Shown: positions 12,601 to 60,883, counted from the first letter of the stretch. The stretch is DNA of 64,000 bases from Botryllus schlosseri (GCA_051294905.1 CM119386.1:9920001-9984000), one strand, 5' to 3'. Notes: generated from the letters alone by a model not told the origin. Program-made: numbers and translations.

Positions 12601-15600
12601 AAACCGATCTATAGTGTAACGGGATTCAATGTCAGACGACTAATGAGTTTATTACATGTATACTTTTAGATCCTCGGTATAGCGATCGTTCTACTGATAT
12701 AATAAGAAAGTTATCCGAAAGCACCGCCAACATAAAGGAGTACGATTTCCTCCAGCTAGGAAGAGCGGTCAATATGATAAATACTAGAGGCAGGATTGAA
12801 GTATACTTTGTGATCGATTTATCCGAAAGCATGAAAGACAAACATATACAAAATCTGATCGATTTTTCAAAGGCTCTGATTAAGAGGGTGAGTCATCAAC
12901 AATTATCAACTGTGTTCATCGTTCGCATTGAGTGTTGCTTGCACTACATGATATCTGTAATAGCCTGTGACGTAATCACTAAAGTTCGAAACCTTACATT
13001 GTAATGGCATCACACTGAGCAACACGGTGGGAATACCAAGGCGCACTGAAACAAATCTATTACTGCACGAACCAAAGCACGTGAATTGAAAACGTTTACT
13101 ATTTACGTTCACAATATGGCGCAGTTCAGACATATCTATATATGTCAGCAGACGGGTTGGTATGCCCAATGCCAGTGACTTGAATACAGGTTTGCGATGC
13201 TTCAGGAAACTGAATGATCCACACTTTTCCCTATAGGAACCGGCAATATTTTCAGTCACCGTTTATGTTACGTTCACAACGTTTTCTTGAAACATCCTAT
13301 GCGAAAGTGGCGACAGACAGACAGACATTGCTTCATTGATCATTTGCTACCATCGTATAATTTTTCTTCTATTTTCCTTTTTTAACAAAACATTTTTACA
13401 GCCAGACTGTTCAGAGTCAAGTGTACCTGTTAGATGCTGATGTGATCAGACTAGATGACCTTCACGGTCTTATCGATCATTCCCATCTAATACCGAATAG
13501 GCCTATACTGTACAGCAGGGGCGGGCAACTTCTCGAGTCGGCGGGCCGGATATAGGAAAATTAAGTACTTGGCGGGCCGGATTGCTGAATCGATACAATA
13601 TTCGCCCATTTATCCACATTCCACATATACAAGGAATAAATCGCATTTAATGAATACATTTTAACGACAGTAATGTCACTTCAAAGCCATTTCTCGCCGA
13701 TAATGACGAAGACAATGTGGATTTGAGAATAGCATTGTCATACAGGCGCCGCCATGTCTGCTTCTATCTGATCAATCAACACACGGTACAATCCTCAATT
13801 AAGATTTCAAGGAGTTCGATAACCCCGGTACCCCTAATTTACCAACACATATATTCGTTAGGGTTGAGTAGGTGACGAGATAGCATCGTTGTTCAATTGT
13901 GTGGCCTGAGAAATCTCGATAATGAATTCATGCGGTCCGCGACCTCTACGAAATTTGAAAAGTGACCCGCGACCCGTTTTGAGTTGGCGACCCCTGGTAT
14001 AAGCAGTGTTTTCGTCTTACAAAAGCCTAGAAGTGTGCCGTGCTACAAGTCGGCGGTTACAGAATGAAAAATAAGAAATATCAGCCTGGTGTAATTGACC
14101 ATTGTAGTCGACAAACACCATGATTACCACAAACGACATTAGGGTTGAGTACGTCGCAAATGCCGATAATGCAAGTCTTCTCGCTTCGACGAAATTACGC
14201 GTAAGCTCCACTCTAGCACGCTGCGCATATACGTATATAATAACATGCACTATGCAGTCACTAAAATTTGACGTAAGCAAGTAGTGGGAAATCTCGGCAG
14301 ACTAGGGCCGCGGGCCACATTATCACGTAAAACGGAAAACTGTCCGCGGGCCGGACAAAATCCCTTCGCGGGCCGGATCCGGCCCGCGGGCCGTATGTTG
14401 CCCACCCCTGCTGTACAGTGTACAATACATGCATGCATATTTTCTGTACCACCATCACTGCCGTTTGTTATGTATTTTGATTGGATGAAAAATAAAGACT
14501 CTCTCTCTCTCTCTATGATTGCTATTTATTAAATCAGTATCATCTGTTTTATACGATTGCAAACCGTATTTATAGTGGCCATTTCGTCATCGCAGACGAA
14601 CAACGAGCAGACTCACAGACGAACGCTAGTGAACAATGAACTGAACATGCATTACTAATTTTATTATTCCTGTGCTTATCATCAGGAAATTGTCAATTCC
14701 ATTTCTCCAGATTAGCCGAAACGATACGGGCAATCGGTTGAGATTTGGGATCGTCGTATTCGCTACAAAGCCGTCGACTAAGTTGAATATTATGGATGAA
14801 CCACCCGCCACTCCCAAAAAAGTAATTGACATACTGGATGAAATAGTACTCGATTACAGTAAGTGAACAAATTGTTGGAGTATATTCCACGTAGGTGAGT
14901 TGATTGGCAAACCATGAGAAGGTATATGGTCTATAGTCCATCTTTATACAATATTATAGACCATATCAGTGGTTGTCAACCGCCGGTCCGTGTGGCAAAT
15001 GCCATGCCCGTCTGCAGAATATATTATAATTTTATAACTCAATTCCAAATGGTCTCCCTGTAATTAAAGAAATATATCATCAAATTTTAAATCGATTTAG
15101 TTGTTTGGAACGTATGTTGCACTATGGTGTCATAATAGGTTAAATAGACAGTTGATACTCCGCTTTGGGTGTACGTTACAACGATGCAAGTGCTGTACGA
15201 AACTGTTTAAAAGTAGCGTCGAATTCGTTGCGGACAAGTTATATCTGGAAGCTACTGAGACTCTTAAACAAACTTCGTTTTGCGCTGCAGAAGCTCCAAT
15301 AGTTCCACGTATGAATATCTAATATCAGAAAAGAAGCATTAAACGAAGTTTACGATATTACATATCAGTTGAAAGCAAACAGAGACGATGATATCAATTT
15401 TGCACTTTTCATCAGTAGACGATTTTATAAAAATGTTGTTCAAGAAAGATATTATCTTTGGGAATGGTACCGTATCGGTAATGTATCAACACCCGAATCG
15501 TGTTTTAACAAGGGAACATCCGGAAAAAAAACGGAGGAGGAACTGATATCTACAGGGCTCTAGACTATCTTTATAAAGAACACATGACAGATTCGTACAA

Positions 15601-16925
15601 AATTCATCCCCAGGACAACGTCAAAAGACATATTTTCGTCCTAACTGATGGTGAGACGTTTTCTATGTCTTGATATTATAACATATTCTTTATACCGCAT
15701 ACCATGATGTCAAATCGTCGGCACACAACAAAACCGTTTAATACGAAATATATGACCCACAATCTTTGGATTTAATCATTTTAGGTCTATAACTAGTTAT
15801 TTTGTGTCATCTCAAAACCTTCTCTCAAACACAGGCGCCAACAATGCGGGTCCGAGGCCGGTCAATGCGAAGTTCATGATCGAGCTTGAATTTTTTGAGA
15901 CAGCCATTCCAGAGGTAATATTAACATTTTTCATGAGTCAACGTTTTGATGGGTGTGACATTATAAAGAATGCGACGCCTCCATGCAACTATCCATTCGT
16001 TTCGATAGTCGTGCAATTACTCAGATAGACGTAATAAAAGCATTCCTATAAATTAGGGTTTCCATACGTCCTCTTTTAAGAGGATTTGTCCTCTTTTTTG
16101 ACTTTTTTGAATGTGTCCTCGGTGGACACCCGAATATCCTCTTTTTTGAGAACTTGTCCTCTTTTTTGAAGATTTTGGTTAAATATAGGTGAAAATTCGA
16201 CTAATACATAGGAAATCAGTACTGAGGTAACGTTCCGGCGGATATTTCGGGAGTCGAGCCGGAAAGTGGACCTTTTTTTAGTCGCCATAAGGAAAAATTT
16301 ATAGAAAACCGTAAATTCTGGCTGTGAGCCGGAAATATGACCTTTTTAAATTTTATTTTGTTTTTATTTTTAGTCAACCGACCACAAAGTCGTGACAAAT
16401 TTACCATTTTTTCCGGTCTTAACTACAGTATTGTGTCTCTGAAAATTTTGAAAAAGTGTCCTCTTTTCAGATTTCCAAAATATGGTAACCCTACTATAAA
16501 TAGCACGAGATTTTTTGACCAAACACCACGATGGTGTGCGGACTACAGGCAATACGTCATAGCCGCGGAGTTGAAATCTTGAGACACCCATCCGTAATGC
16601 GGATATTGAAGATATGCACAATTGCACATCAAATCTATTTTTCTTGGTATCGCAGTCTTCTGATATTTTGAAATAATGAAATTATTAATAAAACCGATAC
16701 TATAACGTTTAAGGACATATACTACGACCAGTTTTACAGCATAACCTCGTCCGCACAAACCAAAGACCCCGAGGCTCGACAAAAGTTAGAGGAGATAGCT
16801 TCAAAGAATGAAAACTTCGTGTATGTCGATGACTTCTACAAGCTGCATAAATATATCGACCAGGTTACGGATGTGAAGGAAGGTATATCTATTTCGGGTC
16901 ATTGCTGAGCGTTCATATATGATAC

Positions 16926-16959
<34 letters not shown>

Positions 16960-19900: not shown

Positions 19901-22900
19901 TAACGTTCAAAAATGCCGGATTTTCCGGATTAGCTAGACATGTCATGGGCTGCTAGATTACGATATGATATGCAATTGCTAGATTGCGAAAAGGTATAGT
20001 TTCAAACGTTATGGAGGGCCATATTTACTGTGATGAAATATTTGATATGGGTGACAATGCGGTATGAGCGGAACCAAGCAATCCGGTACCTAAATTATAT
20101 ATACTGATACTTTCGTGAAACCATATTTGTCACTCCATAACTACTGTGCGCAAAGCGGAACAAAATTTATGGGCGTTTCTTGACTTTTATGAATATTAAA
20201 TGCTGGTACTCCGTGAAAACAGCCCCGAAATTCCTCAGGCTATGTTTCGTATTGGGGGATTAAATTACTTCTACTTGACAAACTGAAAATAGCGAAAAGT
20301 AAGTAAGTAGATCACAAAATATTACGAAGTAGAAGTAGAAGTAGAGAAAATCAGATATTACTTGAATAAGTACCAGAAGTAGAGGAAAACTGCTTGAGTA
20401 CTTCCAAAAAGTAGAAGTACTTCGTTACTGACCACCACGGCTATTAGCCCATGGATTTTTCAGAGTATAAATATCCGCTACCTAATGGAAATCATCCTCC
20501 CGAGAACAGGTTATTATTTAATTACTATTCCTGTCCCATGAGTCCCAGACGGAAACATAAACCGTTTCTCAGTTGAATTCAACTCAATATTTGTTCAAAG
20601 GTATTTTTCGCAGGCCTAGGTACGGCGACGGATTGGACGGATCTGTGAGAATATTTCGTCCAGAAAAGATTGTATCTCACGAACTTTATGAGCGTGATGA
20701 TGAAGGCAAGCTGATGGTTCGCTCCTTTAGACACGATATCGCCTTGGTAAGTTGTTTCCTCCACAAAAATGAAATTTGTGAAATTTAATGAAAGTGGTAG
20801 CGACTGGCGAATTTTCACTTCCTCTGTCTGGCTCCTCCGATGGGCAAAAGCTTCAATAAAGTCTGTGCAGCAGTTCTTGTATCGTGGAGGCGGTCTTTTA
20901 AACTTCCTCGATCTTGCTGTCAATGAGCCGTTTCAATCTCGACGTTTGCGGGTAATATATAGAGGCACTTTCATAACAGATAAAACTCGGTGGGGAATAC
21001 GTCATCGACGGAGATTATATTTTTGAACCCCAATTCAAACCAGGAGACGTCGGCTATCGAGGATTCGTTGACTTCACTCCTTACGTGAAACCCGTTTGTC
21101 TACCTTGCAGCAATAGTAGTTGCGTTCACGAAATATTGAGAAAGGAAGATAGCAACGGCGATATCATGATAACCGGAAATGAAACCCCCGAAAGACAATG
21201 CGAAATCGAGCGTAAGTTTGTGAACGTCGAGAGCGCACTGGACGGAGTACCATCTTTTCCCATAGATAAGCGGATAGCGCATTGATTCAAACCAATATTG
21301 TGTTACGGATATCATAATAAGATCCGAGTCCAGACGCAGAATCACGCACTCCTCCATAGGTCCGATACTGACTCAAAATGCATTCGAAATTGGCAGGAAA
21401 GTTGAATATTATGTGAAAATCCGTGTCCAATTGTAGTCTCGCAAAAAAACGCGTATTCAAGCCTGGTCAAAATCTTCAAATCCAATTCCCTATTATTATT
21501 ACGGAGCGTCATACAATACTCAGCGAGTTCTCGGGGCACCCGAAAAGACAGTGTACTAGATGAAACTGTAACTCGGATACCATATATTGCATGGTATCCG
21601 AGGTACAGTTTCATCTAGGATGGTCGTAAATAACACCCGTTTACATGTAGTACATAACACCCTTTATCGACTGTAGGCCTACTCCTTGCCATATAAGGAT
21701 AAAGTGTAGGCAGATGGATCGACTGGATTGGATAACTTAATTTTATGTAATGTATTCGTATTATTGGCCCGTGACCCGTTACCAATTTCAGATAACTACT
21801 TATTGGGTCTTGAAAACGACGGTGAAACGCCTGTTATTGCCTCGGGGTTCGGACACAACCAAACGCGTGGACGCAACGACAGAATTAAGCCAAGTACAAC
21901 GCTACAGTTGGGCGCCTTGAAAATTGAAAAAAGAGAACAGTAAGATCACCATGATTCCGTACAGCTCACATATTTTAGTATCCTATATAGCAGTTCTTCC
22001 TTTATCATCTTCAAGTCTACTACATGCACTATAACAAAAGAAAAAAATGAAAATCTAATATAAATTAAGTATAGCCAAAACAGCAATTGTCATGCCATTG
22101 CTGTTGCCCTTCCCCCCAACATATCATTGTGAATATGGGTTTTCAATAATGTTATTTCGGAAGACACTAAGCTATGCAATGTCCTATTGTTATTCAATAT
22201 ACCATGTGGCTGGCTCTTTTCAGCATCACCAAACCAAGAATTGCCGGAGCAAAAGCAAGCTCAGCCATGGCATTAACTGAATATATCATAAATATTTTAT
22301 CATGTTTTGTGCGTTGTTTTTATATCAGTTTATCATTTTAACTCTAGTGATTGCTGTATAAACCAGTTTCTATTAATTAAAAATAACATTTCCTAATTTT
22401 TTCACACATCCGGAAAAATAGGGGGCATTGATTTTTCAATATTTTCGAATAAGCCCACGATGTAAAAACGTTGGCGACCCCTGCAAATATAGCTTAGCGC
22501 ACATTGCCTGGCACAAATATTTAATAGGATCTATCTTCCTATATACAACTCGAAGGTCAGGGTTTAGTTGCAGGGTGGCGGTCGACCTCATCAATGGTCA
22601 AATGAAACGGACGCGCCGTGTGTTTTCGAAAGAGATGCTATGCGCCACCGGTATACCGGACAGGAACAGTGGGAAAATGCCAGATACATGCCAGGGCGAC
22701 AGCGGAGGTCCGGTGGTTAGAGAGGTAACAATATTCTTAAAATTGCAAACCCAACAGTAGTGCGCTATATCAGCGATCCGCCCAAAGTGATGTAGCCGTT
22801 TTTCTGGGTAACTTGCTGCTTTTGTAACAATTCCAAAGAATGATAGGCAAAATAACATAATCTTTTTAAAACTGCATCCAAGAGGTGAACATTGTCAGGG

Positions 22901-23490: not shown

Positions 23491-23576
23491 GATTAGAAGC
23501 AGTATACCTTCTGCTTCATCAGTGTAAACAGAATACTGTAATGCGTAGTTCTGTATGATTATGATTACCCATCAAT

Positions 23577-23582
23577 AATAAA
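23577..23582 (+). promoter_or_regulatory. Candidate polyadenylation signal of the Bf-like gene
   Basis: AATAAA 87 nt downstream of the TGA. Confidence 0.5.
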
Positions 23583-24689
23583 TGGGGTAAAACGGAGTGC
23601 ATATATGTTAGCCAAGATATACTATGATATATGACTTATATATGTAAGTTCCTCGAGGCAAAGAATTTGAATATCACAACAAACAATACCCTCATGTTAG
23701 AGATGAATAGATCATCTTTTTTCGGGATCCGTATACGATCCGGTTCGATAAAGCGTAATCTGGATCCTATCTGGATCCTGTTTCTGTGTGTAATGATAAA
23801 ATCCGGATCCAAATATATCCTGCTTAAGGGTGAGCAATGAGCATGACCAAGCATTTATTGACGAACCGAGTATTACTTTTTCTGAGTTCTCAATAGGTTT
23901 CGCCTACTTGCGCTACTTATACTTAAGTACTAACATTCTGCGTACACGTCTACTCATGTTTTTATCCAAAAGTACTTAGGCTACTTTTACACTTTGGATT
24001 TTATACCGATGGAGTTGCCCATTTGCAGTGCTCACTCATGTGATCATGATTTTAGACTACTTAACAGCTTTCTGTTTTCAAGACGGAATTAGGCCCAGAA
24101 TACTCATATATTTAGGCCTACATACTTGGACATCGGTACTTCTACCCGTAGCCTATTTGAGTAGAAATTGACGAAGTTACTTCTACTGCTACACGAGTAC
24201 CAACGACGACTAATTTGACCAACCACCTAGGGTAGCTGGTACTTTTCAAATTCTACCTTCGGAAGTACATTGAAGTTTGCGATAAGGGTTTCTTTGAAAT
24301 TGTGGTGCACTGCACAAACTAGTAGTAGAGAAATACAAAGTTACTGTCATGCGATGGAAATTTAAAATCCTATCCGGATCCGGCACTAGGTCAAAAATGC
24401 CAATCCGGATCAGTCCTGTTTCGGAGAATCCGAAATCCTGATATAGCCTACATCTCTACTTCATATGCCTACATTTTTTCGCTCCAAGTTTCCTTAGTCT
24501 CATCGAGAGCGACCGTTAGCAAATGCGGAGATCAGATTTCAGAATTTCAAGGATGAAAAATATACTTTGTGGCATAAGAATGGAAGAAAAACAATATGTA
24601 ATTTAAAATACGAGAGTGTTAATCATGTAGTCAGAGGAGACAACGCTAGTAAAATGTCCGGAGACGGAGAGTATAGCCTATATAGAGAG

Positions 24690-26173: not shown

Positions 26174-26252
26174 ATAGAGAGGCGGTCCTTTGTCGACAGA
26201 CAATGTTTTCTAGTTTATGATAGTCGATTCGAGAACATTAAATGGACAATAC

Positions 26253-29200
26253 TGTAACACGAGAAATGGTCAAGTGATTGTGAGCCTCGCAGCTCAGTAG
26301 TGCCCTCTGTGGTTGGATTGTCCCCTCGTGTCTTGATAGTCACTTGTTGAAGTCGAGTCGCTTTGTTGCTTGTAATATCATTGGATCAGTGATTGAAGTT
26401 AGGCTAAATTTGGGGATATAATGTACCATAGGGCATTATTTGTATGTTCAAGTATTGTATAAGTTTAAGCCATCATTCAGGTGATTGTATTTTATTGTTT
26501 AGATTGAAAGTTTAGAGCCTAGAGAGTTAACTGTTGTTAACCGCTATTGTGACTATTGCCTCGACGTTGACGTGATCTTTCTATGTAGTAAATTGCTATC
26601 CTATTCTGTAACTGTTTGAGTTACATTTGACCGGGTCTCAGGGGTAGGCTCGGATTGTAGGAAGCAAAGAAAGTGAGGTGGTAGTCTCAATTCGAGTTGG
26701 CAAGCTACTCGACAAGCCTAAAATTGTCACAGCCAAAACTCTAATCAAGTAAATATAACGAACTGTCGTTTGAGCTAGGCAACGACCAAAACGTCCGTTA
26801 CATTTAAGTTAACAACAATCTCAGAAGTTATTTGAAGACTATCAAAACGGCAATTTTTGGTAGAAACGGTCGTCCACAGTTTGATATATCCAAGCCTATT
26901 GTATAGACTTGGCCATTGTTGAATATCAATTGCTGTAAGTGGAGTACCGGTATTGTACCGTTTGACAACTGTTAGTAGAAGTATTGTATTGGAAGAGCTG
27001 ACATTGAATTGATTGTTAGAATCAGCTTTAGTAGCAGTTGATACAAATTCGTAAGACTATTGAGGCTGGTGTTCCCAATAGAAAATTTGACTGCTAAGCC
27101 AAGGGTTCTCAGCAGAAGTATTTTGCATTTGAATGAGATATAGGTTCTCATATGAGGCTAGTGTCCTCCATACATGAAATTGTCCTCGTTGTAATTGAAA
27201 GTAGAAGCAAGTTCAGGAGTTGTTAATTGGCCCAGCCCTAGGTAAGCAAATAGTTAGTTCACGTCAGTCAAAACGGTAATGTGCAACTGAGGTTTCCAAC
27301 GTCTCTCCAATTCGTACCTGATGAAAAACAACAATGACCATGGCAAGAATTAAGTGTGTGTCTGAAGAAGAATTGATTCAGAAGTTGGCCGGACTGCATA
27401 GAAGATATGAAAGCATTGAACACGAAATCTTGACCCGAGACGTAAATATCAATCTTCTGAGACATCAAAGTGATCTACAGTGTATGTTTCAAGAATATTC
27501 TACACTCTGGAGTTTATATCTCCTCGGAGTCGAAGATGATCTAGAAATGATTGCATGTCATGAAGATCATGATAAACAAGTGAGAATTTATCATGAATTC
27601 CAAACTAAGTTGGAGAGATGCATGCAAGAAAGATCGAAACATACACGTTTGAATTATATTGGAAGCAGTCGTCATATGTCTCGGCGATTTGGAAATGCTT
27701 ATTCTGCCAGCATACATGATAGTGTAAACGTGAAGAGAAAAGAAGCAATAATCAAAAAGAAAATGGCTCATTTGAAATTGGCTCATCAGTTCAATCGCGA
27801 AGTTTTGGAAGATGAGAAAGTAATGATTGAACGTAAAACGTCACGATTACGATTGAAGCAAGACTTTGAACTTGCTTGCGTTGAAGCAAGTATTTGGAAA
27901 TCCTCAGCTAACGTGCACAAGCTACATTCATACTCGCAGAAGAATACTGAAGAAATGGCTGTTTGTCAAAGTACTGCTCTGAAGCAAAGCAGTGTAAATA
28001 CAGAGAATCCAGTTTCTCCTGCCCCCGTGGGACTTGTTGTGAAAGGCCTTGGCAACACTGCACAAGTATTTGTCAATGGGACAAGCAAAGATAAATGTGA
28101 TGCGAAAGGTCAGGATGTGGAATGTCCAAGTAATTCTGAAGCTGCAGTATTCAATTCCACTGAAGTCGATGTTATCGTCGATCCTGTCAATGCGCCACAC
28201 CCAATTGAAGATTGCATCAAGGCAAATACTTGTGTTCAGGACCTTGGTATTTTGAAAGGAAACTATGACAACGTTGAGGACTGTGACACAGAATGTTCTC
28301 AAACCACAATGGTTAAATTCGACAGTGCTAGGTCTTGTAAATTTCCTGATATTGGAAAGGCGCTGAAATGTATTCCGGAAGACGTTCTCCATGTGAACAG
28401 AGTTGATAATCATAATCCGGAACATACATTGTTGTTGGAACACTCCGGTTGTTCTCGTGATGCAAAGTTTGAAGGTGAAACCGAATCACCTAATGCGCAT
28501 GATGAAGTATCAATACTTCACAAGTCAAGCCATCCTGATCCAACTGGTAATGGTCAGGTAGCAAAGATGCCTGTGCAATTTGTGCATAGAGAAGTGACAG
28601 GAGATCAATTCACATTTGAGAAACGATATTCTCTTGATGCCAATATTGAAAAGTTGATGACACAGGTGTCAATGGATTGCGCATTGGATTCAAAGATTGA
28701 AGCATGCTCTCGTTCCATAACTGGTGATGATGGGATTCGCAATGCGAGTGCTAATTTCCAATCGAAATTGTTGAAGGATCCACAAGGGTATTCTTACAGT
28801 ACTGAGTTTGATGAAAAAGCACCTCTTTATAATGGGGCTTGTCTTCAAGAGCTGGCTCGGTTTGGTAGCATGGACAAATCAATGTTGGAGTGGGCTGCCA
28901 TTTGGATTGGCACTGATATATTGTCATTATCCTTCTTTTATAAGGAGGTGCAAACGGAAACAGCTTTGGAGACCTTGAAGAAGATCGATTGTATGGTGAA
29001 TGCCATTGTGCGATGTGGATCGAACTCCGATATCTCCCAAAGAAGAAGAGTGGAACCTTTCTTCATGGAGTTCCAGTTTTTTGTTCGTACTTGGTTGATT
29101 GTACAGCCAGTAAACAGATGGTTGTTCGAAAATGTTACTTGAAGAAACCTTTTGAAGAACATTTGACCTATATTGATAGTGACATTGTGGCATGAGTTGA

Positions 29201-33106: not shown

Positions 33107-36100
33107 CGGGGCCTACGATAACTTACGGCCTTATCTGGTACAAAACACTTGCAAGATCGAGGAGGCCGGCGCTCGCAAAACAGACATCGGCGATTGTTTT
33201 CGATTTCTACCAGACGACTCCCTTTTGAAGCCATAGTATTCGTTACGCAGCTACCGTTGAGCATTTGCGATTGGGCTTCTCTGTATAGCAGACGGCTTAC
33301 AGTTTGAGGCAAAGATTTCGAGCTAGTAGCTGCATTTGAATTATTATGGATTATGGAATCATGCCGTGACTAGCTATGATACTACAATAACGAATGTGTT
33401 CGATTGCAGTCGCGACTGAGTTATGTTTAGGTGCCGTTTTGACTAGCTTATAACTATGAGGTAGGCTACCTTTACTCGGCTAACCGTTGTGCATTTGCGA
33501 TTGTGGTTCTCTGTATAGCAGACGGCTTTCATTTTAAGGGAAAGATTTTTAGCCATATATTCGGTGCGTTTGAATTATTATCGATTATGGAATCATGCCG
33601 TGATTAGCTATAAAACTACAGTAACGACTGTGTTCGATTGCGGTGGCGACTGAGTTACGTTTAGCTGCCGTTTTGACTAGCTTATAACTATGAGGTAGGC
33701 TACCTTTATTCAGTTGGTAAATAACTCATTATATTGCGGCGTTATGCGCGCCCACTATTATCAGCCGAGAATTCATGGCGATATTTCATGCGGCCTTCCT
33801 GACAGCGAATTTCGACTGACTATATACTTAGTAATTCAGGCTTGACTTAAGGCATAATAATGGCCAACAAATGTTGTGTTTATGGTTGTAAGACAGGATA
33901 TCTGACAACTGGGAAAAGGTTTCGTCATTCCGCTTTACATTTTATGATTTGAAGTTCCTCTGCTTCCTTGGTTCACACAAGGAACAAGTGCTACTCTGAC
34001 TAAGTTTGGTGCTTTACTTAATTTAGCGAAATATCTCGAAAATGTCTGAAAAATCCGCCAACAATTTACTGGAAGAGCTTCCAAATCTACTATATTACAA
34101 GACTCGGTGTTGCTCATATTGCGTATTCATCCGAAATAGATTCGTTTTGCGCTCCTACTTCGGTATACATCTGCGCAAGCTTATAGAATTCATACAAGAA
34201 GGTTTCCATTTCCCTCAACGTCAACGTTGTCTCGGTACAGTAAATGGAGCGTTGACGCATTTAAAGTCCATGGAGATATGAAAGAAGAGGGCGAGATCTC
34301 CACTGAAATAATGTTGATGGTATAGATGAGATGTACTTACAGAAAGGTGTTCAATAGCACGCTGGTAAATATTATGGAGTAGATGAAAGCGGTCACTTAT
34401 AAAGGCATTGTTGTAATGATGATCTCTTCAAAAATCTTCTTCAATCGTGGTGGAGGCACTGCCAGAGACCGAAATTACGGGAAGATGGTAGGCGGAAGAA
34501 TTACTAGAGTGTATTGCTACTCTCAATGAGAATGGAGTTTTTGTTCGGGATAATCATCCATCCATTGTGAAAGCATTTCAAATATTGCGAGAAAAATACC
34601 TTAGCAATGACGAGTTCTCTTTTCGTTAATACACCCTGCAAGAAACTATCAATTGAAAGATAGTTCTCGCAGTACAGGAAAATGAGTGGGGGACGGTTTC
34701 TAGTCGGTTTAACAGAAGTTACCAATTCTGAAAAGATAATACTGCTCCGTTCCATGCTGAAAATTGACATTAATTTCTGGGGACATTAAGTTTGTGTGTA
34801 AAGCTCAGCTCATTTGGATCGTTTTAAATATGTGGCAATTGAACTTACTCGATGACTTATATCTCCTGACAGTGAGGAGGTGTCCTACTATGTTGCTGGG
34901 TACATTGACAAAAATGTCCTCAAAAATTGCAATTGCAAATTGCTTGCCTCTGTGAGAAAATATGATGCGAAGGACTTTAAAAAACGGAAGTTGAGCAGCA
35001 TATGCTTCATTGATGCATTTGATTACTCGAATTTGTTGTTGAAGCTTTATAACCATAAGCTTGGTGTTCGTTTTTGCAGTAGTTACTTGTGAAAACACTT
35101 ATATAAAGGCATTGTTGTAATGATGGTCCATGGTCTTCAAAAATCAACATCCATCGTGGTGAAGGCACTGCCAGAAACCGAAATTACGGGAAGATGGTTG
35201 GCAGAAGAATTACGGGATTGTATTGCCACTCTCAATGAGAATGGATTTTGCGTTCGAGGACTTGTATCAGATAATCATCCATCCAATGTGAAAGCATTTG
35301 AAATAATGCGAGAAAAGTGCCCTAGCAATGATGATTTCTCTTTTCATTACACATCCTGCAAGAACAAAACGTATCTATTTTTTGATAATGTTCATCTTGT
35401 AAAGAACATACGAAACAACTTGCTCCGAGCCAAGAAATTTGTTTTTCCACCATTCTCCTTCTGCATAAATTCTTCAATAATATCATCTCCGGGTGGATTC
35501 ATTGCATGGAGCGACCTTCACAAGATCAGAGAATGTGACGACAAGCTGGATGCGAATTTGCGCAAGGCGCCGAAATTGACGTATGCCTCTTTGCATCCGG
35601 GCAATAACAAGCAAAATGTTAATTTAGCTCTCGCTCCATTCCACGAGTCGACTATTGCAGCTTGCAAAAGCTACCTGCCTCACAGGGAAGATATGGCTTC
35701 ATTCTTGAGCCTAATTAATGCTTGGTGGACAATTGTAAATAGCTGTCACAGATATTCACCCAATCCATTGTCTGATGCAGTAATTTCACATGATGGTAAA
35801 ATCAATTTCCTACAAGATTTCTCTAATTGGCTGATCAAATGGAACGGATACAACCCTCAAAATTATTGCCTGTCCAAGCAAACATTCAAAGCTCTGATCG
35901 GAACTTATGAACTTATGAAAATGACTTCAATTTATTCTTTACATGCTGTAATTGATTTTACCATGCATTAAAATACTTATCATTAGCAAGTTTATTCCTT
36001 ACCGCTATATAGTCTATTTGTGTGATTAGTGGATAAGGGGATATACTGGATAATTGTATCTTGGATGCTGTCAATTGTAACTTTAGGAAAGTACTAATTT

Positions 36101-38777: not shown

Positions 38778-40517
38778 TTATTCTGTGCTTCATTGCTTCG
38801 CAGACCCGGTGAAAGAGCGCACTCACAAGGGAGGGAAAAAGCAAGAAAGAGGCGCGCGAAAACGAACTGTGACATCGGGCACTAGGCTAGGATATATAAC
38901 GGTTATTTTCAGGGATATTTTTCGGGTTGGGGTTAGTTTGGAGGTCCTATAAAGTCACAGCATGCTAAAATGATGCATGCTAAAGTGTCCTATGTTCAAC
39001 TGTCGTTTTCGATTTTGTTGCATGCTCATATGTCGGGCTACCATACATACGGAAGATGTGGTACCAACGAGACACTGGGACCGAAAATACTCGAAAATTT
39101 ATCTGTGATAATCCCATGATTACAGTACGCGAATTTGTCCACAATGGCATGCTGGCAGAATCGAGTCAAGTCAAGTCATACGAAAAAGGTGACTGGAGTC
39201 TGACTTGAGTCAAGTCATGACTCGAGTCATCCCGACACTGCCCTGTTTACCGTCTATTAGGGTCAGTGACCCAATGTTTACCCATCAGATAACTCATAAG
39301 CTCAATTTTTAACTATTACGGCAGTTCTCGGCCATTTGTGAGGCCAAATTCGTGTTATACTCGAAATTTGGGGTGTTCCGCAGTTTCCGGGTTTTTTTAG
39401 ATATTTTTCACCAGGCCATGTTCAGCGCTTACAAGGCTAAGTGACCAAATGTTTAACCATCAGGTAGGCCTACCTCGTATAATTTCAATTTTCACCTATT
39501 ACGACAGTTTTCGGCCATTTGTGAGGCCAAACTCGTCTAATACTGGAAATGTAGGGTGTCCAGCGGTTTCTAGATATTTGCCACGAGGCCATATGCTGGG
39601 CGTGTATAATCGTTAGTGAACGAATGTTTGACCCGCAGATACTTGATAAGTTCAATTTTTAACTTTATACGACAGTCCTCTGCCATTTGAGGCATAATTT
39701 GCCTTATACTTGAACATTTGTGTCCCGCGGTTTCTAGATGTTTGTCACGAGGCCACGCTGCGCGTGTATAATCGTTAGTGACCGAATGTTTGACCCTCAG
39801 ATACTTCATAAGTTCGATTTTTAACTATCACGACAGTTCGCGGCCGATGGTGTGGTGAGGTTAAATCTGCGTTGTATTCGAAAATTAAGGTGTTCGCAGT
39901 TTCCGCGTTTTCTATATATATTCCGCCAGGCTATGTTCAGCGTCTATTAGGGTCAGTGACCGAAGGCTTAACCCTCAGATACTTCATAAGTTCTATTTAT
40001 AACTATCACGACGGTTTGCGGTCGTTTGTGAGGTTAAATCTGCCTTATACTCGAAAATTAGGGTGTCTCGCAGCTCCCGCGTTTTCAAGGTATGTTCCGC
40101 GAGGCCAGGTGTGTAATTGTTAGTGAACGACTGTCTGACTCTCAGATACCTAGTAATTTCAATTTTCAACTATTACGACAGTTCTCTGCTATTTATGAGG
40201 CCTAAATCGCCTCACTCTAAAATTGGTGTCCCGCAGTTTCCTCGTTTTAGACTTTAGAGTTCCTTCAATGAGATCTACAAATGTCGATGACCGACTGTTC
40301 CGCGTTCCGCCTTTTCCGCTGTTTCCTCGTTTTAGTGCCTACTTTGTGCTCTATAGAGGTCAATGACCGACTGTTCCGCGTTCCGCGTTTTCCTCTGTGT
40401 TCAGCGCTTTAGGAATCGAGGTTTCCCGCTTTTTCCGCAGTTTCCGCGTTTTAGGGGCCATTTCCGCGAGTTCCGCGTTTTCCGCAGTTTCCGCGTTCCC
40501 TCCTTTTAGGGTTACCC

Positions 40518-40982: not shown

Positions 40983-40985
40983 ATT

Positions 40986-41954
40986 TACTTCGTTTCCATG
41001 CTCGGCCGACGGTCGGCCGAAAGGCCATGACGCATGCGTTGTACATGTCGGCCGTGTTTCCATGAGCAGACGTAACCCAACCGTGACTTGGCCGAACTAG
41101 GTGGGCGAAGCGATCGCGATGACGTTTTTGGCTTACTTACTCAGTAACAATTTCAAAATAATCAGAAGATTGCGATAAATGACTCGGTAGGAATGAGTCG
41201 AAAAGACTTGTAGCGATCATTCAATCAAATAACACGCTTTGACCTTGAACACGAAATGCATCCAACATGTAAAATGGTCACGATGAACCAATTGCTTAAA
41301 ACTAACAGAAGATAAAATAAGATGGATAAAAGATGAAAATTGGTGGCATATCTTCGTATGTGGGGGATATAGATATGGGATATCGTGGTCCAATAATTTC
41401 GAGCACAGAATAGTAACTTCTCCAGTAGTCTACCGGTACTACTGTTTCGTCGTCATGATTCAGACATGAACGTCCAGTGTCCTGTCGATGATTTGCTTAC
41501 CAGGGGAATGTGAATAAGTTCACCTAGTTTGTGGTCAAGCGGTATAGTTTGTATTGTATCCATGCACCATAGAACGCAAACCTTCGAATTGTGGCAGCAG
41601 CGTATGTGATCAGATCGCGAAGATTTCGGTAGCCTACGGGTAATTCGTAGCAGTACCGGTACTACTAAATTCCGTTACGATCATAATTCTTGGTTTCTCA
41701 AGGCGTCCAAGATCCGTCCGGAGTGCAGCCATGGTTAATTTGATACGAAAAGTGTATTGTAAGTAGCGAATACCAATTAGCTAATCGAAGACACAGCGCA
41801 AGCATGGCCGAAGGGCTAAGCCGAAGGATTTACTAGATGGCCGACGAGTCGGCCGACGTGGGTGTGCATCACTTTAAATGCGCAACAAAATTCTCTCGTT
41901 CGTCGGCCGAGTCTCTCGAAAATGGGCCCATCGGCCGAGCATGGAAACGAAGTA
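40986..41954. mobile_element. 969-bp non-autonomous TIR element, PIF/Harbinger-like
   Basis: TIR TACTTCGTTTCCATGCTCGGCCGA at both ends; 3-bp TSD ATT; its removal restores the Gypsy codons CAA-TGT-GAT (Q-C-D). Confidence 0.8.
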
Positions 41955-44774: not shown

Positions 44775-44777
<3 letters not shown>

Positions 44778-44809
<32 letters not shown>

Positions 44810-45520: not shown

Positions 45521-45577
45521 GTTTTGTGATGGAAAATTTATATTGGGGTTTAGACTCTCGGTGTGGACTTGAAAGTT

Positions 45578-48500
45578 ATGCACTGTAAGCACATACCCGC
45601 TGGTTACAAACTAGATAAAAGGGCTCTATTGCGTCAATGTCGGGTATGTTTACTGTTACCTTAATTTAGCGTGAGATATAACATCTTTATGTCGCTGTTT
45701 CCCACAGATTCCGTGCGGCATATGCAAAGCTGATAAAGGACTCTGGGCTTGCCTTGAAGTGAGTATTAACTATTAATATCAATAATAACTATTTATTATT
45801 GATATAAAGCTACTGATATAGTGATACAAGGATATCCATTCATCATTAACCTTAACCATTCTATTGAAACTAGCCTGACGGCTGACCCGACTCAGATATC
45901 CATTGCTTGCACTTGCAGAAAAGCTGTTACTTTAATGGATGCGGAAAAAAAGCTAAAGACCATAGCACAGAACATCACAAGGTAACGTGCTAAAAATACT
46001 CTGTAATTATTGCAACAATTTATATGGAGCAAATGTCGAATTTCTCACAGCTGCAAAATATCATACTCCTGCTCCTATATACCTCTCTCTTGTCGAGCAT
46101 TATATACTACTGTCGGTGGCAGGATATTTCCCACTGTGAAGTATAAGCGGTAGTGTATCAACTTCAGGAGCGACCGAGTCTATTTTATAGAAGTAGGCTA
46201 TAGTATACAACCACCAAATTATGTCATTATGCACATTGTCATGCCGACTCATGCGCCCTCCAAGTCTGAAATATCGGCATCGTCCGGACAACCGGAGAGC
46301 TGCAACAGGTTATTGTTGAGGTCATTGTTTTGCAGCCATCCGATTATTCTGAACAATGCAGATTTCAGATGTTGAGGGTGATTTTTAGTCAAGTTCCGGA
46401 GCCCTAACCATATTTTAATTTATATTTTCGGAATCAGTGCTACAGTAGCTTTTGATCAAGACCAGATTCCGTAAATTCTGCCCTCTGGATGAAAATTTTG
46501 GATTGCCAGAAATCCTACAATCACTGCTACGAAGCAATTCGTATTCAAGCCTTGGCGGAGCGGAATGAAGCTGTTAACATTCTATATTTAAACCCTCTGT
46601 ACAAATCTGGTCATTACTATGGCTGTATGTTAATACCAAATAAAGAGAGTTTGATCGCGTGCGCCACTTCACCGAAGTCTAGCCAATCTTGCTAGAGTGA
46701 GCAATTTTGTAGTTTTAACTTTAATTTGTTCCATGTGATGAAATTTATCAAGACTTTTTTTCATTTCAGAAAACAGGCCACCCTGTTGCGGTGAATTTAC
46801 AGACGTTCCGGTGTTGGTGTTGTATATGCGAAATTGAAATCAAGCTTTTTAATACTGATGAAATTGTAAGTCTCCTAATTCAGTTAAAGAAGTAGACGGG
46901 ATAGTTCCTACTCATTTCAGTAATGCTTAAAGCAATTAACCACACACATACAAATATATTGTGACTATGACATAACAATCTAACGACTCTTGAATGTTTA
47001 TATCTTACTCTATCACAGAAAGCTTTGAAAGAAGAACGTAAACTTTTTTTATCTCTACATTCAAGCACTGCACAGGGTAATTTAGTTAGTTGATGTTTAT
47101 GATAAATTCATGTAAATAACAATTTTGTCCGTTTGTGCAGTGCCTTGGACAATGGACGTTGATTGTGAAAGCAACACAAGGACCTCTACCCTTGGTTTGA
47201 CCGGACTGGAAAACCTTGGGAATACGTGTTATATGAACGCAGCGCTGCAGGCGCTTTCAAACTGGTAAGTAACGCATCCGGAAGCTAACCCTATGCCCCT
47301 CCTCTGTACCATGTTTTATTAAAATCTACTGGTGGTAGTTCGTATCTATATATAGGCCTACGTAAACAAGAGATGTAGCACCTTCCATACAACTTTTTTA
47401 ATTCACAAGCCTCATTTGTACTTATTAGGATGGAAGATAATCTTATCCTTGCACAGTGTTAAAACTGGAACCGTAGGCTATGTTCTGAAGTTTTTGGTTC
47501 ATTCTCTTGTTGACAAATGAAACACATCCTACTGACAGCTAGTGACTGCGATCCCTGTTTTCAGCATGCAATTAATGTGTTGCATTCAATTAATGTATTG
47601 CATTATCTTCTGAACAACATCAACTCATTCTTGTTAGCCGAACGGAACGCCTGTGTCTTGTAACTAATCCTTTTCGTGTCACACACCTGTAGTTTGTAGC
47701 AAAGTTTTCTGAAATGCCATCCGTTTAGTTCGCCGTTGACTTACTACTTCATATCTGAGTACGCGGAGCGGAACAAATCCCACAAAAGCGGTTCAATGTC
47801 ACTAGGGTATTTCAAGGTACGACATTACTCGATACATGTTACCGTTTTTCTATCCCGGCATGCGTGCTTACATTCAGATGCTGACAGAGTTCTGGAACAA
47901 AAATATGTACCAAAGACCGCCTTACCTCAACCCTGCCGCGATACATATGTCTCTGAAAACGATCAACCCTTCTTTTAGAGGATATCAACAGCAGGTATTC
48001 TTTACGCTTCGGTGCTGCCTGTAATGTGATATGCAATGAGCCTTTTAGTTGCCAGTGGATTTGTGTACTATACTTTATAATTACTGAGTAATAATAATCA
48101 GTGAGCCACTGCTGAAGCACGATAAGTAGAGGAGGGGTATTCCGAGTGGGGAGGCAACGTTCTTCAAGTTTTAGGTTTGTTGACTGTGACATGATCATTT
48201 TTCTTCATGTAGCAGTGGATAGTCTGCCAAATATGATTTTCGTTTATGCTGTTGGATGTATATTGGACATGAATTATGTTTGACCATATTGTTCCACCCG
48301 TCCTACTCCACTGTTCCGAAAAGCTGCAGACCCCTATCGTACTAGGAATCGCTAGCGTTCAAAACCACTGCTGATACTTGAACGATTATATAAATATGTG
48401 AATAATGATCGCAACACTTTATTGGTGATATCATTGCCACGCCGGACAGTCGTTCAATGACAACCATGTTTTTCTAAATTTTCTCTCGAAACTTTGAATG

Positions 48501-58303: not shown

Positions 58304-58796
58304 AAGCCGAAAGCAGTTTGTTGTGATGTTTCGTCTAAATCTGTAATTTGTTTTGAAGTATATATGCCCCTTTATGGATCTGGCTTTGACGCTGATAGTT
58401 GTTAGAGATCGATTATTTGGGTGTTTCTGGCTATTTCCGAATGTCTATGTGATACTGTCTATGGAAAACCGTTACATAAAATCTCATAAGTTGCTACTGT
58501 TTGGAAGTGTCTGACTTGTGGGTGTACAGACTGTGCAGTGCAGAATATGGTCGGGTGGAATGGCGAGGTGGCGTTAATTCACAGCTTATAAAGAAAGCCT
58601 AGAAGTAGGCCGTGCTAAAGTCGGTAAATACAGAACATCGGCCTGGTGTAACATGACCAATTGACCAATGTAGTCGGAACACCATGAATATAAAAAAAAC
58701 AGCTGACAATTGCTGAGGTAGTACACTACCAGTGGTTTCATCATCATTATGTATATGATACGAAGTCGTCAGTCCAGTTTGCATGTCAGGTGTGAT

Positions 58797-60883
58797 CGGA
58801 GGTAGTTAAGCAATTACAGCTACTCAAGTAGAAGTGGCGACGCAAAAATATACTCAAGTACGAGTGGAAGTAGCACTTTTAAAAGCAACCTAAAGATACT
58901 TGAAGTAGAATCGCCTGTCTTTAAATCTACTCAAGTTAATAGTGAAAACTGTCGTGACTCGTTCGCATGGACTGTCAAAAACTGCAAATTGAGCTATGCG
59001 GAAGGTGTAGAGAGCTTGATGCATCCCAGGACGGATATGCTTTCGACAGAATAAGCACTCGTTGCATTATGAGATGCAAATGATAGTTGTGATATGGAAA
59101 CGCGATACTAATCCATTATTTACTCGATCACTCTGTTATAGAAACTATCATGGCATGGGCTCCTCGCCCCATATTATAAGGACCTTAGTTTAGTCGAGGA
59201 GCGACATGTAGAAGTTGTATTGGATACGGTGTTGACACCTTGCGCGAATACTATACGTGAAAAATATGGCGGCTCGTAAAAATGCCATATAGTGTAGGGT
59301 TGCCATACGTCCGGAATTTCCCGGACATGTCCGGAATTTCACTGAAAAATCTGCGTCCGGGAGGAATTTCTAAAATATGCCTAAATGTCCGGAATTTTGA
59401 AGGCTTCAAGCATGCTCAAAATTTTTTCGTAAATCAACATAAACAATATTATTTTCAAGCAGATTTATGCCATTCAAAATTGTTCTTCGCGCTGCGCGGG
59501 AGTTAATGCAACGTATGATGATATTAGTATAGGCACCTGGCACTACCCTCGCCAAAAAATGCAATCAAAATAAATATAAATAACCATCACTTACTAAAAT
59601 AAGTCTGATAGTAACCGCAATTATAAGATATAACGGTATATTCCTAGAGTTGGTTAAGGTCGATTGGGGACTTCGGTCACAGACAGTGGTTCGAAATTTT
59701 GGGGTCATTCGCCTTTATCTGGGGATCGCGATGATGTTGGACGCAATCAGCTTCCTGGGCCGTGAGATAAGTTTGGGCAAGCTGATTTTTTTAGTAATCA
59801 GCTTATCAAGTTTTGAGCTTTGCCACGAAACATTTTCAGATGGGAAATGAGGTCGCGACCATGAAAGGCTGGAAATCACCGGATGTGCAACCTGTTGGTG
59901 CATTTTATAGTGGCCTAATCTATGGAAGAATCAATATTATTGACAGAATTCATACATAAAATTTAACAGGCAAATGCATATAGTAAGTGCCCAACAAGTA
60001 ACATCGACTACCCAATGGTGGCCCCAAGATCAGTGCTTTTTTGGGCGGAAGGGGGGAGGGGAGAAAAAAAAAGTTTTTTCGGACCTGATTAAAACACATA
60101 AACAGATAACCGCACCAACCTAACAGTATAGCAGGGCTGTCAAACACAATCCTGACAGGCCAGACACGGCCCGCCAGATGACATCATCCGGCCCGTAGAG
60201 GAATCTATTGTAGACCCTAGCAAGTAGCAATCACCAGAGCTCACATTACAGATGGCCAGATTCATGACCTATGTTCCACTCCACTATAGTGTATAGAGTC
60301 GATGGGCAATGGTTTGCTATTGTGACGTCATATTGACGGTCAATGTGTTACATCTCATTTTAAAATCCGCTAGTGGGCGCTAAAGAGTGTCCGGAATTTG
60401 CTTCACAGAAATATGGTAACCCTAATATAGTGTGGCTTTATTTTTTGAAAATGGAGGCATTACTCATGCACTTGCTTTTATACGTCAACATGTATGTTCT
60501 CCAGACAAAATAACTGAAACTAATTAGAACTCGAAGCCTGATATATATTCACCGATACTTCCGTGAAAACATTTGTCACTCCATATCTGCTATGCGCCAA
60601 GCGTGACGAAAATTCAGGTCTTTACTTAACTTTTATGATAATTAAATGTTTGTAGCCTACTCCGTATATAAATAGCCCTGAAATTACTCAGGCTATCTTT
60701 CTGCTTTGAGGATTTGACCACTTCTACTTGACAGACTGAAATTAGCGAAAAGTAAGTATTAGTGAGATTACAAAATATTATGAAGTATAGAAGTAGCGAG
60801 AAATTAGATTTACTTGACCAAGTATCGGAAAACGACTTGAGTAATTCGGAAAAGTAGTATTACTGCGTTACTGACCACCACTG
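58797..60883. mobile_element. Second copy of the 19177-20440 hAT-type family, interrupted by 59295-60424
   Basis: Colinear similarity on both sides of the insertion; right end GTTACTGACCACCACTG. Confidence 0.75.
59295..60424. mobile_element. Second copy of the 4699-5795 family
   Basis: TAGGGTTGCCATACGTCCGG...ATATGGTAACCCTA; 8-bp TSD ATATAGTG. Confidence 0.85.

What the first reader, a model, noticed from the sequence alone, without database searches (positions are those of the whole stretch)
13490..60660. TA dinucleotides converted to TAGGCCTA or TAGCCTA: a recurrent micro-insertion signature, possibly excision footprints
Seen, in three paired-repeat comparisons. (a) LINE 3' UTR: ccgaaTActg in the 44.9-kb copy vs ccgaaTAGGCCTAtactg at 13498. 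(b) Foldback arms: catcagaTAcctc (left arm, reverse complement) vs catcaggTAGGCCTAcctc at 39465. (c) hAT family: ggTActccg at 20207 vs tgTAGCCTActccg at 60653. TAGGCCTA occurs at least 8 times (2231, 5453, 13498, 21674, 24053, 38252, 39465, 47353), where a rough base-composition estimate gives about 1. TAGGCTA/TAGCCTA occurs at 18 or more further sites (roughly 8 expected). Known: TA-targeting Tc1/mariner elements leave TA-CAG-TA or TA-CTG-TA footprints. Inference: an unidentified TA-targeting transposon with GGC...GCC termini, or another TA-specific insertion process, has marked the genome, even inside other transposons.
Basis: partly seen in the sequence, partly recalled or inferred. Interest (0 to 1): 0.7.

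Follow-up and report, generated by a model that had tools for sequence, protein, structure and literature searches.

The report
Transposon excision scars at TA sites
This marine animal's genome holds roughly a hundred thousand tiny 5- or 6-base insertions at TA sites (TA becomes TAGGCCTA, TAGGCTA or TAGCCTA); they look like the scars that cut-and-paste "jumping genes" of the Tc1/mariner/pogo kind leave when they jump out, so the mechanism is known but the scale is unusual.

Summary
TAGGCCTA occurs 8 times in the window against about 0.5 expected, and TAGGCTA/TAGCCTA 21 times against 4.6. Genome-wide there are 43,701 and 131,669 sites, several-fold above controls.

In repeat families the motif is a clean +6 or +5 insertion at a TA that 2 to 10 sister copies keep as plain TA. 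Five such cases lie in this window. About 77% of sites in both motif classes have purine-TA...TA-pyrimidine flanks, so one process made both.

This is the signature of excision footprints of TA-targeting Tc1/mariner-superfamily transposons. The only such transposases I found in the genome are pogo-type (DDE_1, DD35D). Several families look intact and have TA duplications, GG...CC ends and the same purine preference next to the TA.

Its "GGC...GCC termini" detail is not. No such element was found, and its predicted full-retention product TAGGCGCCTA lacks footprint-like flanks. No donor/scar allele pair was seen, so the source family is inferred.

Scars outnumber candidate elements about 100 to 1, which is unexplained. 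Other windows of this genome carry the same first-reader note.

The parts
39465..39472 (.). TAGGCCTA footprint in one unit of the 167-bp tandem repeat of the right foldback arm; +6 bp (GGCCTA) at a TA
   Evidence: Six or more sister units have CAGATA|CCTC without it
36533..36539 (.). TAGCCTA footprint, +5 bp at a TA inside a dispersed repeat
   Evidence: Five paralogs at 73-87% identity have GAG-TA-TTG without the five bases
60653..60659 (.). TAGCCTA footprint, +5 bp at a TA inside the 'AGTAGAAG' hAT-like repeat family
   Evidence: Four paralogs, including window 20207, lack the five bases
2672..2678 (.). TAGGCTA footprint, +5 bp at a TA
   Evidence: Two paralogs have GAATA|CTCATT
3861..3867 (.). 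TAGCCTA footprint, +5 bp at a TA
   Evidence: Two paralogs have GAGATA|CTC without it
13498..13505 (.). TAGGCCTA abutting the left end of a 0.93-kb TIR insert in a LINE 3' UTR; origin not resolvable
   Evidence: LINE homology to the 44.9-kb copy stops at the TA and resumes at about 14430
23977..24680 (.). Cluster of five motif sites in 700 bp of unique DNA (23977, 24113, 24149, 24444, 24674); candidate footprints, not polarised
   Evidence: about 0.3 sites expected at the window's own density
2231..2238 (.). TAGGCCTA, candidate footprint in unique DNA (no paralog to polarise)
5453..5460 (.). TAGGCCTA, candidate footprint, not polarised
21674..21681 (.). TAGGCCTA with G..C flanks (ctgTAGGCCTActc), candidate footprint, not polarised
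38252..38259 (.). TAGGCCTA, candidate footprint, not polarised
47353..47360 (.). TAGGCCTA, candidate footprint, not polarised
26400..26406 (.). TAGGCTA copied with a 100%-identical 304-bp duplication (second copy at 29444-29450); at most one event
33462..33468 (.). TAGGCTA shared by two units of a 234-bp tandem repeat (second at 33696-33702); at most one event
41630..41636 (.). TAGCCTA shared with a 98.8%-identical LTR-element copy 195 kb upstream; inherited, not a local event
36287..36293 (.). TAGCCTA that is ordinary repeat-family sequence (paralogs have TAGCCTA, TTGCCTA or TAACCTA); not a footprint

Best explanation
The motifs are donor-site scars of cut-and-paste transposons of the Tc1/mariner superfamily that insert at TA.

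Proposed mechanism:
1. On insertion the TA is duplicated.
2. On excision the transposase cuts the 3' ends exactly and the 5' ends a few bases inside the element, so each flank keeps TA plus a short 3' overhang made of the element's first bases.
3. End-joining then seals the gap.

With ends that start GG...CC and a 2-base stagger, full retention gives TA-GG-CC-TA. Loss or overlap of one base gives TA-GGC-TA or TA-GCC-TA.

The most likely sources are the pogo-type (DDE_1, DD35D) families of this genome whose ends read TA|GGGG... or TA|GGGT..., together with their roughly 960-bp non-autonomous derivative.

Shown here:
- polarity (the motif is an insertion)
- TA duplication
- constant filler
- a flank signature common to both motif classes
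- existence of matching elements with a TA duplication and the same flank preference

Inferred:
- that these particular families, rather than a lost relative, made the scars
- the 2-base stagger
- the end-joining route
For: (1) Polarised insertions. About ten clean cases in 264 kb where one copy has +6 GGCCTA or +5 GCCTA/GGCTA at a TA that 2 to 10 paralogs keep plain. They are enriched over all other TA-N-TA words (Fisher p = 3.6e-5 and 9e-4).

(2) Genome scale. TAGGCCTA has 43,701 sites and TAGSCTA 131,669, against controls of 2,851-9,854 and 51,110.

(3) One process. RTAGGCCTAY accounts for 30,261 of 43,701 sites and RTAGSCTAY for 76,921 of 131,669. After subtracting background, both classes have about 76-78% purine...pyrimidine flanks, against 31% expected at random.

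(4) Transposases. Pfam searches of the genome found no Tc1-type DDE_3 and no mariner hit, though the mariner search also found nothing in its control genomes. They found at least 72 pogo-type DDE_1 hits, many with open frames of 540-640 aa. These carry DDE_1 plus HTH_psq and an intact D..D35D triad.

(5) Ends. Families A, B and E have TA|GGGGAGAG.., TA|GGGTAGAG.. and TA|GGGGAGAC.. termini. A 948-bp GG-ended derivative has an empty paralogous site showing a 2-bp TA duplication.

(6) Flank preference. The base next to the TA is a purine at 15 of 15 GG-ended element ends (G at 11), the same bias as at the scars.

(7) Stagger. Three-base products of GGG ends are not enriched: TAGGGTA, TAGGGCTA and TAGGGCCTA in the 264-kb sample, and TAGGGCCCTA genome-wide at only 568 sites. 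This fits a 2-base stagger.

(8) Literature. Tc1/mariner transposases cut 2-3 nt inside the 5' ends and exactly at the 3' ends (PMC2170065). [quoted passage not shown] The pogo-family element Passer leaves 0-4 bp footprints in cells (PMC9976928).
Against: - No locus was seen where one allele or paralog carries a GG-ended element and the other carries the scar, so the donor is inferred.
- Scars (about 116,000 after background) outnumber recognisable GG-ended ends about 100 to 1. TAGGGKAGA is only about 2,400 above control and the exact 14-mer end occurs 221 times.
- The more numerous CCG-ended Passer-type elements have left few scars, so the imbalance needs a special explanation.
- The 3-base class is about 2.3 times more common than the 4-base class. 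That is the pattern expected of a 3-base stagger on a GGC-ended element, not obviously of a 2-base GG overhang.
- The read-laying run gave no information on polymorphism at the motif sites.
Confidence: 0.7

Rival explanations
1. The scars come from a TA-targeting element whose ends really are GGC...GCC and whose transposase cuts 3 bases inside, as for Sleeping Beauty. The element is rare or extinct and was not in the DNA I could read. Three-base overhangs GGC/GGC would anneal fully with a central G:G mismatch, giving TAGGCTA/TAGCCTA as the main class. They could also anneal by a perfect 2-base GC:GC overlap, giving TAGGCCTA.
For: This model explains most naturally why the 3-base class dominates (about 80,000 against 36,000). 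In the same genome, CCG-ended Passer-type elements seem to leave some 3+3 products: TACCGCGGTA has 954 sites against 89 for TACCCGGGTA, and ATACCGCGGTAT dominates its R..Y class. A 3-base stagger therefore occurs among these transposases. Only 20 of at least 72 pogo loci could be inspected.
Against: No TA|GGC TIR element was found in 264 kb or in 20 pogo loci. The predicted full-retention product TAGGCGCCTA has footprint-type flanks in only 100 of 2,688 sites, and GTAGGCGCCTAC is almost absent. At the Passer rate, several hundred would be expected.
Confidence: 0.2
2. There is no insertion process. The words are simply part of abundant repeat consensus sequences, or reflect a compositional bias of the genome.
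For: This is true for look-alike words. Most TACCGGTA sites lie in a high-copy repeat or in LTR-element copies. TAGGCGCCTA and TAGGGCCCTA also behave like repeat sequence. Some TAGSCTA sites are inherited with duplications or are family sequence.
Against: Sixteen of 24 TAGGCCTA sites in 264 kb lie outside repeat-covered DNA, and half of those inside are clean insertions relative to paralogs. The sites sit in many unrelated families. Flanks vary but keep an R..Y bias.
Confidence: 0.03
3. The scars come from the abundant elements whose ends read TAGGG.../TAGGC... (hAT-like MITEs such as 61141-61348), or from another non-Tc1 process such as the TA-microsatellite-targeting tyrosine-recombinase element noted elsewhere in this genome.
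For: Such TAGG-ended elements are common in and around the window.
Against: The TAGG-ended elements have 8-bp target duplications, for example GTGGACAT, GTGCTGAT, ATATAGTG and GCCTGTAC, and the TA is part of the element. The scars show no 8-bp duplication. From general knowledge, hAT excision goes through flank hairpins and does not leave element bases. From general knowledge, tyrosine recombinases excise conservatively.
Confidence: 0.04

Closest known systems
Canonical Sleeping Beauty / Tc1 / mariner excision footprints (TA + 2-4 element-end bases + TA)
   Same: TA is duplicated, the filler is constant and derived from the element termini, the net insertion is 5-6 bp, and repair is by end-joining (PMC2874221, PMC2170065).
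   Different: The filler is GGCC/GGC/GCC instead of CAG/CTG. The scars are seen as a genome-wide k-mer excess of about 10^5 sites rather than at experimental donor sites. The stagger and donor are inferred, not measured.
Passer (pogo superfamily, DD35D) of fish: active element leaving 0-4 bp footprints (PMC9976928)
   Same: Same superfamily as the candidate donors: DDE_1, DD35D, short TIRs and a TA duplication. This genome also holds a true Passer-type non-autonomous family whose TIR closely matches the published Passer TIR.
   Different: The candidate donors of the common scars end in GGGG/GGGT, not CCG. Their transposases are longer (580-616 aa against 400-500). Passer-type scars themselves are rare here.
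Genome-wide footprint surveys, e.g. rice O. sativa vs O. glaberrima (PMC4423477)
   Same: Excision sites of DNA transposons are recognised by comparing filled and empty sites genome-wide.
   Different: In rice only 8 of 94 excisions left a simple footprint and most had deletions or filler. Here one stereotyped junction dominates strongly enough to distort k-mer counts.

Membership tests
Tc1/mariner-superfamily excision footprint | Site is an insertion relative to the ancestral state, at a TA | tested here: met
   About ten polarised cases against 2-10 paralogs each
Tc1/mariner-superfamily excision footprint | TA is duplicated and separated by a few bases identical to the element's terminal bases | tested here: met
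   TA-GGCC-TA and TA-GGC/GCC-TA; TA-flanked elements with GG...CC ends are present
Tc1/mariner-superfamily excision footprint | Same target-site preference at scars and at resident elements | tested here: met
   Scars have about 77% R..Y flanks; 15 of 15 GG-ended element ends have a purine at -1. The element sample is small.
Tc1/mariner-superfamily excision footprint | A donor locus seen both occupied and scarred (allele, haplotype or experimental excision) | not tested
Tc1/mariner-superfamily excision footprint | Position of the 5' cut (2 vs 3 nt) that fixes the filler length | tested here: inconclusive
   Three-base products of GGG ends are not enriched, which favours 2 nt. The dominance of the 3-bp class would favour 3 nt on a GGC end. 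This needs biochemistry.
pogo family transposon (candidate donor) | DDE_1 catalytic domain with D,D,D triad and N-terminal HTH | tested here: met
   PF03184 at E 1e-20 to 1e-25; HTH_psq reaches Pfam's cut-off only in family C (L033), is marginal in family A (L025) and was not detected in family B (L037) or L034; DETG...D-35-D in all copies that reach the N-terminus
pogo family transposon (candidate donor) | Terminal inverted repeats flanked by a 2-bp TA duplication | tested here: met
   19-20 of 20 matching TIR bases and TA on both sides in nine copies; empty site for the 948-bp derivative
pogo family transposon (candidate donor) | Current mobility | not testable with these tools
   Open frames and near-identical copies suggest recent activity, but no polymorphism or expression data were obtained

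The most novel reading that the evidence does not exclude
The scars are a fossil record of an extraordinary burst, or of continuing hyperactivity, of one pogo-like lineage. About 116,000 stereotyped donor-site scars stand against about 1,000 surviving elements. This would mean either that each element jumped about a hundred times, with repair almost always by one end-joining route, or that a once-huge family has excised itself nearly out of existence and left only its footprints. Either way the k-mer would give a direct, datable count of past transposition events, and the intact copies may be a naturally active pogo system with a defined 2-base stagger.
Probability: 0.3. Interest if true: 0.6.

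Novelty: new member of a known kind. Interest (0 to 1): 0.42.

Why it matters
Excision footprints are textbook, but they are usually seen one locus at a time. Here a single stereotyped scar is common enough (about 230 per Mb) to be among the most over-represented words of a 495-Mb animal genome. Four consequences follow.

1. It defines a recurrent 5/6-bp insertion class that breaks reading frames and must be allowed for when aligning repeats or haplotypes of this species.
2. It offers a count of historical cut-and-paste events that copy numbers cannot give.
3. It predicts the cleavage geometry and target preference (R-TA-Y) of pogo-type transposases that look intact and could be tested as tools.
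4. The 100:1 excess of scars over elements, and the contrast with the Passer-type family in the same genome, is an open quantitative puzzle about excision and repair in the germ line.

Tried and rejected
1. TAGGG-ended MITEs in the window (61141-61348, 55943-56260, 59297-60425) as donors. Rejected: they have 8-bp target duplications and the TA belongs to the element.

2. My own argument that [quoted passage not shown]. Withdrawn: 11 of 12 TACCGGTA sites in 264 kb are repeat sequence.

3. TAGGCGCCTA as proof of a GGC-ended element. Withdrawn after the flank test.

4. CpG decay of CC-type scars as the source of the TACAGTA and TACCATA excess. Not supported: CpG observed/expected is about 1.0 and none of 34 covered TACAGTA sites is a polarised insertion.

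5. TIR scans for TA|GGC...GCC|TA pairs. All hits were interior points of larger inverted repeats or of LINE or hAT-like families.

6. Read-laying for polymorphism or outgroup state at 21000-26999. The tables were filled by a very high-copy repeat at 24690-26200, so there was no usable information on the motif sites.

7. Fetching more genome or public contigs.

8. Full-text search for the octamer in papers. Only unrelated primer or oligonucleotide hits.

9. The 3.7-kb TAGGG-ended element in L009 has 550- and 210-aa frames with no Pfam match. Left aside as unrelated.


Full report
**1. Observation**

The octamer TAGGCCTA is present eight times in the window, at 2231, 5453, 13498, 21674, 24113, 38252, 39465 and 47353. 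Dinucleotide shuffles give 0.51, and none of 100 reaches 8. TAGGCTA/TAGCCTA occurs 21 times against 4.59 expected. Against an order-2 Markov background, TAGGCCTA is the third most over-represented 8-mer of the window, behind only homopolymer and (AG)n words, and GTAGCCTA and GTAGGCTA also rank high.

The window is C16:9,920,001-9,984,000 of a 495.5-Mb assembly. Genome-wide counts are:

| Word | Sites | Control |
|---|---|---|
| TAGGCCTA | 43,701 | 9,854 (reversed word); 2,851 (same-composition palindrome TAGCGCTA) |
| TAGGCTA + TAGCCTA | 131,669 | 51,110 |

In the resulting 264 kb, TAGGCCTA is 13-fold and TAGSCTA 4.9-fold over expectation. They are the top non-tandem words among all TA-N(1-6)-TA words.

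**2. Polarity**

I blasted each motif site with its flanks against the 264 kb. This gave 43 sites with paralogs that span the site. About ten are clean. One copy has TA-GGCC-TA or TA-GSC-TA where 2 to 10 paralogs from the same family have a single TA.

- In the window: 39465 (tandem units of the foldback arm), 36533, 60653, 2672 and 3861.
- Outside the window: positions 12490, 44680, 121238, 153885 and 157572 of the 264-kb sample (coordinate = window coordinate + 200,000, so the first 200,000 bases lie upstream of the window), plus a double TAGGCTATAGCCTA at L018:2311.

An unbiased list of all "TA-X-TA versus TA" indels puts GGCC and GSC (four each) directly after a tandem-slippage hexamer; every other X is a singleton or doubleton. 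Within repeat-covered DNA, 4 of 8 TAGGCCTA sites are such insertions against 19 of 777 other TA-N4-TA sites (p = 3.6e-5), and 4 of 36 TAGSCTA against 6 of 674 (p = 9e-4).

Some sites are not independent events. Examples are copies in a 100% duplicate (26400/29444), in tandem units (33462/33696) and in a 98.8% LTR-element copy (41630). Site 36287 is ordinary family sequence.

The motif abuts a 0.93-kb TIR insert that is absent from the 44.9-kb LINE copy.

**3. One process, with a target signature**

Genome-wide, 30,261 of 43,701 TAGGCCTA sites (69%) have a purine before and a pyrimidine after, where random flanks would give 31% (reversed control 2,271). For TAGSCTA the figure is 76,921 of 131,669 (control 12,496).

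After subtracting a background of about 8,000 and 51,000 sites with random flanks, both classes have 76-78% R..Y flanks. They therefore share an origin, and about 36,000 + 80,000 sites are attributable to it. G is the commonest base at -1, as seen in the 264-kb sample and in the first 100 genome sites listed.

**4. What makes such marks**

A duplicated TA with a few constant bases in between is the form of Tc1/mariner-superfamily excision footprints. The transposase cuts exactly at the 3' ends and 2-3 nt inside the 5' ends (PMC2170065). End-joining then leaves a footprint between the TA duplicates (PMC2874221).

Pfam searches of the whole genome gave:

- no Tc1-type DDE_3 hit
- no mariner hit (the mariner model also failed to ring in the controls, so this absence is weak)
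- at least 72 pogo-type DDE_1 hits, many with open frames of 540-640 aa

In the 20 loci returned, I found TA-flanked inverted ends for five families:

| Family | Terminus | Size |
|---|---|---|
| A | TA\|GGGGAGAG.. | 2.85 kb |
| B | TA\|GGGTAGAG.. | 2.9 kb |
| E | TA\|GGGGAGAC.. | - |
| C | TA\|CCGTAAAC.. / CCGTCAAT.. | - |
| D | TA\|CAGTCATC.. | - |

The transposases of A, B and C carry DDE_1. The HTH_psq match reaches Pfam's cut-off only in family C (L033), is marginal in family A (L025), and was not detected in family B (L037) or L034. The three that reach the N-terminus (L025, L037, L033) show the full DETG...D-35-D triad; the N-terminally truncated family C copy L034 retains only the D-35-D pair.

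In the 264 kb, nested-insertion analysis found two further elements, each with an empty paralogous site showing a 2-bp TA duplication:

- a 948-bp GG-ended derivative (L008:8499-9446)
- an 832-bp CCG-ended element (L002:1430-2261), whose TIR closely matches the published TIR of the fish pogo-family element Passer (PMC9976928)

At GG-ended element ends the base next to the TA is a purine in 15 of 15 cases (G in 11). This is the bias seen at the scars.

**5. Which ends, which stagger**

I weighed two readings.

(i) GG-ended pogo elements with a 2-base stagger. Full retention gives TAGGCCTA, and loss or overlap of one base gives TAGGCTA/TAGCCTA.

Full overlap with a central G:G mismatch gives TAGSCTA, and a perfect 2-base overlap gives TAGGCCTA.

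Reading (ii) explains the 2.3:1 excess of the 3-base class more naturally. However, I found no such element in 264 kb or in the pogo loci. Its full-retention product TAGGCGCCTA looked enriched at first (2,688 against 197), but it fails the flank test: only 100 sites are R..Y and GTAGGCGCCTAC is nearly absent. That word belongs to some repeat.

For GGG ends, none of the 3-base products is enriched. This holds for TAGGGTA, TAGGGCTA and TAGGGCCTA in the sample and for TAGGGCCCTA genome-wide, which has 568 sites, mostly in pairs about 1.1 kb apart. So the largest scar of the GG type is 2+2, which fits reading (i).

The Passer-type family seems to leave a few hundred 3+3 scars. TACCGCGGTA has 954 sites against 89 for TACCCGGGTA, and ATACCGCGGTAT dominates its R..Y class, matching that family's A preference at -1. 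The stagger may therefore differ between families. I put (i) at about 0.5, (ii) at about 0.2, and the footprint mechanism as a whole at about 0.8.

**6. Corrections to my own intermediate arguments**

TACCGGTA is enriched genome-wide (20,540 against 7,227). Inspection showed that 11 of its 12 sites in the sample are repeat sequence and only one is a clean +6 insertion. The neat "two palindromes, two termini" argument therefore does not stand. CpG decay does not explain the TACAGTA excess either.

**7. What does not fit**

Recognisable GG-ended ends are few. The exact 14-mer end occurs 221 times. TAGGGKAGA occurs 5,992 times against 3,627 in the control, and many of these are +/- pairs about 960 bp apart. 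That means roughly 1,000-1,200 elements against about 116,000 scars.

The Passer-type elements are several-fold commoner in the sample yet have left few scars. Several explanations are possible: the GG lineage has been far more mobile, its scars are repaired more uniformly, it was once much larger, or a lost relative is responsible.

No occupied/scarred allele pair was seen. The one read-laying run was dominated by a very high-copy repeat at 24690-26200 and gave nothing on the motif sites.

**8. Known or new**

The mechanism is known. Active pogo-family elements are known to leave 0-4 bp footprints (PMC9976928). Genome-wide comparisons of excision sites exist, for example in rice, where simple footprints were the minority (PMC4423477). 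A full-text search for the octamer found nothing relevant.

What is new here is the scale and uniformity in one animal genome, and the link to particular pogo-type families. Earlier notes of this scan call the animal a sea squirt; I did not test that. Holders of the sequence include seawater metagenomes. Several first readers flagged the same motif in other windows of this genome; none had been followed up.

I rate it a new member of a known kind, of moderate interest.

Noticed in passing
window 23977-24680: Five motif sites (TAGGCTA, TAGGCCTA and three TAGCCTA) lie within 700 bp of apparently unique DNA, about 15 times the window's own density. This could be local hopping or a preferred target patch.
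   Followed up: partly
window 24690-26200: A very high-copy dispersed repeat: summed contig depth reaches 10^5 in every run laid, including two related species. It contains ..GATTTACCGGTAGAGCTGAG.. and accounts for much of the genome's TACCGGTA excess.
   Followed up: partly
L018:2311-2324 (C16:9892311): A double scar, TAGGCTATAGCCTA, where a paralog has a single TA. It is two adjacent footprints forming a 14-bp palindrome. TAGGCTATA and TAGGCCTATA are themselves 8- and 18-fold enriched in the 264 kb.
   Followed up: no
window 61141-61348, 55943-56260, 59297-60425; L009:4553-8246: A group of elements with TAGGGTT... ends and 8-bp target duplications (hAT-like MITEs). The 3.7-kb member in L009 has a perfect 8-bp duplication GTGGACAT and 550- plus 210-aa frames with no Pfam match.
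   Followed up: partly
window 13506-14419: A 0.93-kb TIR element (ends ..ACTGTACAGCAGGGGYGGGCAAC) rich in GCGGGCCGG motifs, inserted in a LINE 3' UTR next to a TAGGCCTA. The junction shows extra short duplications that I could not resolve.
   Followed up: partly
L039:357-372: A family B pogo element sits in a TA only 12 bp inside the end of a GGGGAGATGTGG-type element: one GG-ended element nested in another.
   Followed up: no
L002:1430-2261, L008:9530-L009:371, L011:4909-8209: Non-autonomous elements whose TIR (CCGTAATTTTCCGAATATAG..) closely matches the TIR of the fish transposon Passer. This is a Passer-family MITE in this marine invertebrate, with an A preference next to the TA.
   Followed up: partly
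genome-wide: TAGGCGCCTA occurs 2,688 times against 197 for its reverse, but almost never with R..Y flanks. It must be part of an unidentified dispersed repeat.
   Followed up: no
window 26253-26556 and 29297-29600: Two 304-bp stretches are 100% identical, 3 kb apart. They flank the 602-aa open frame at 27334-29142, which has no Pfam match.
   Followed up: no
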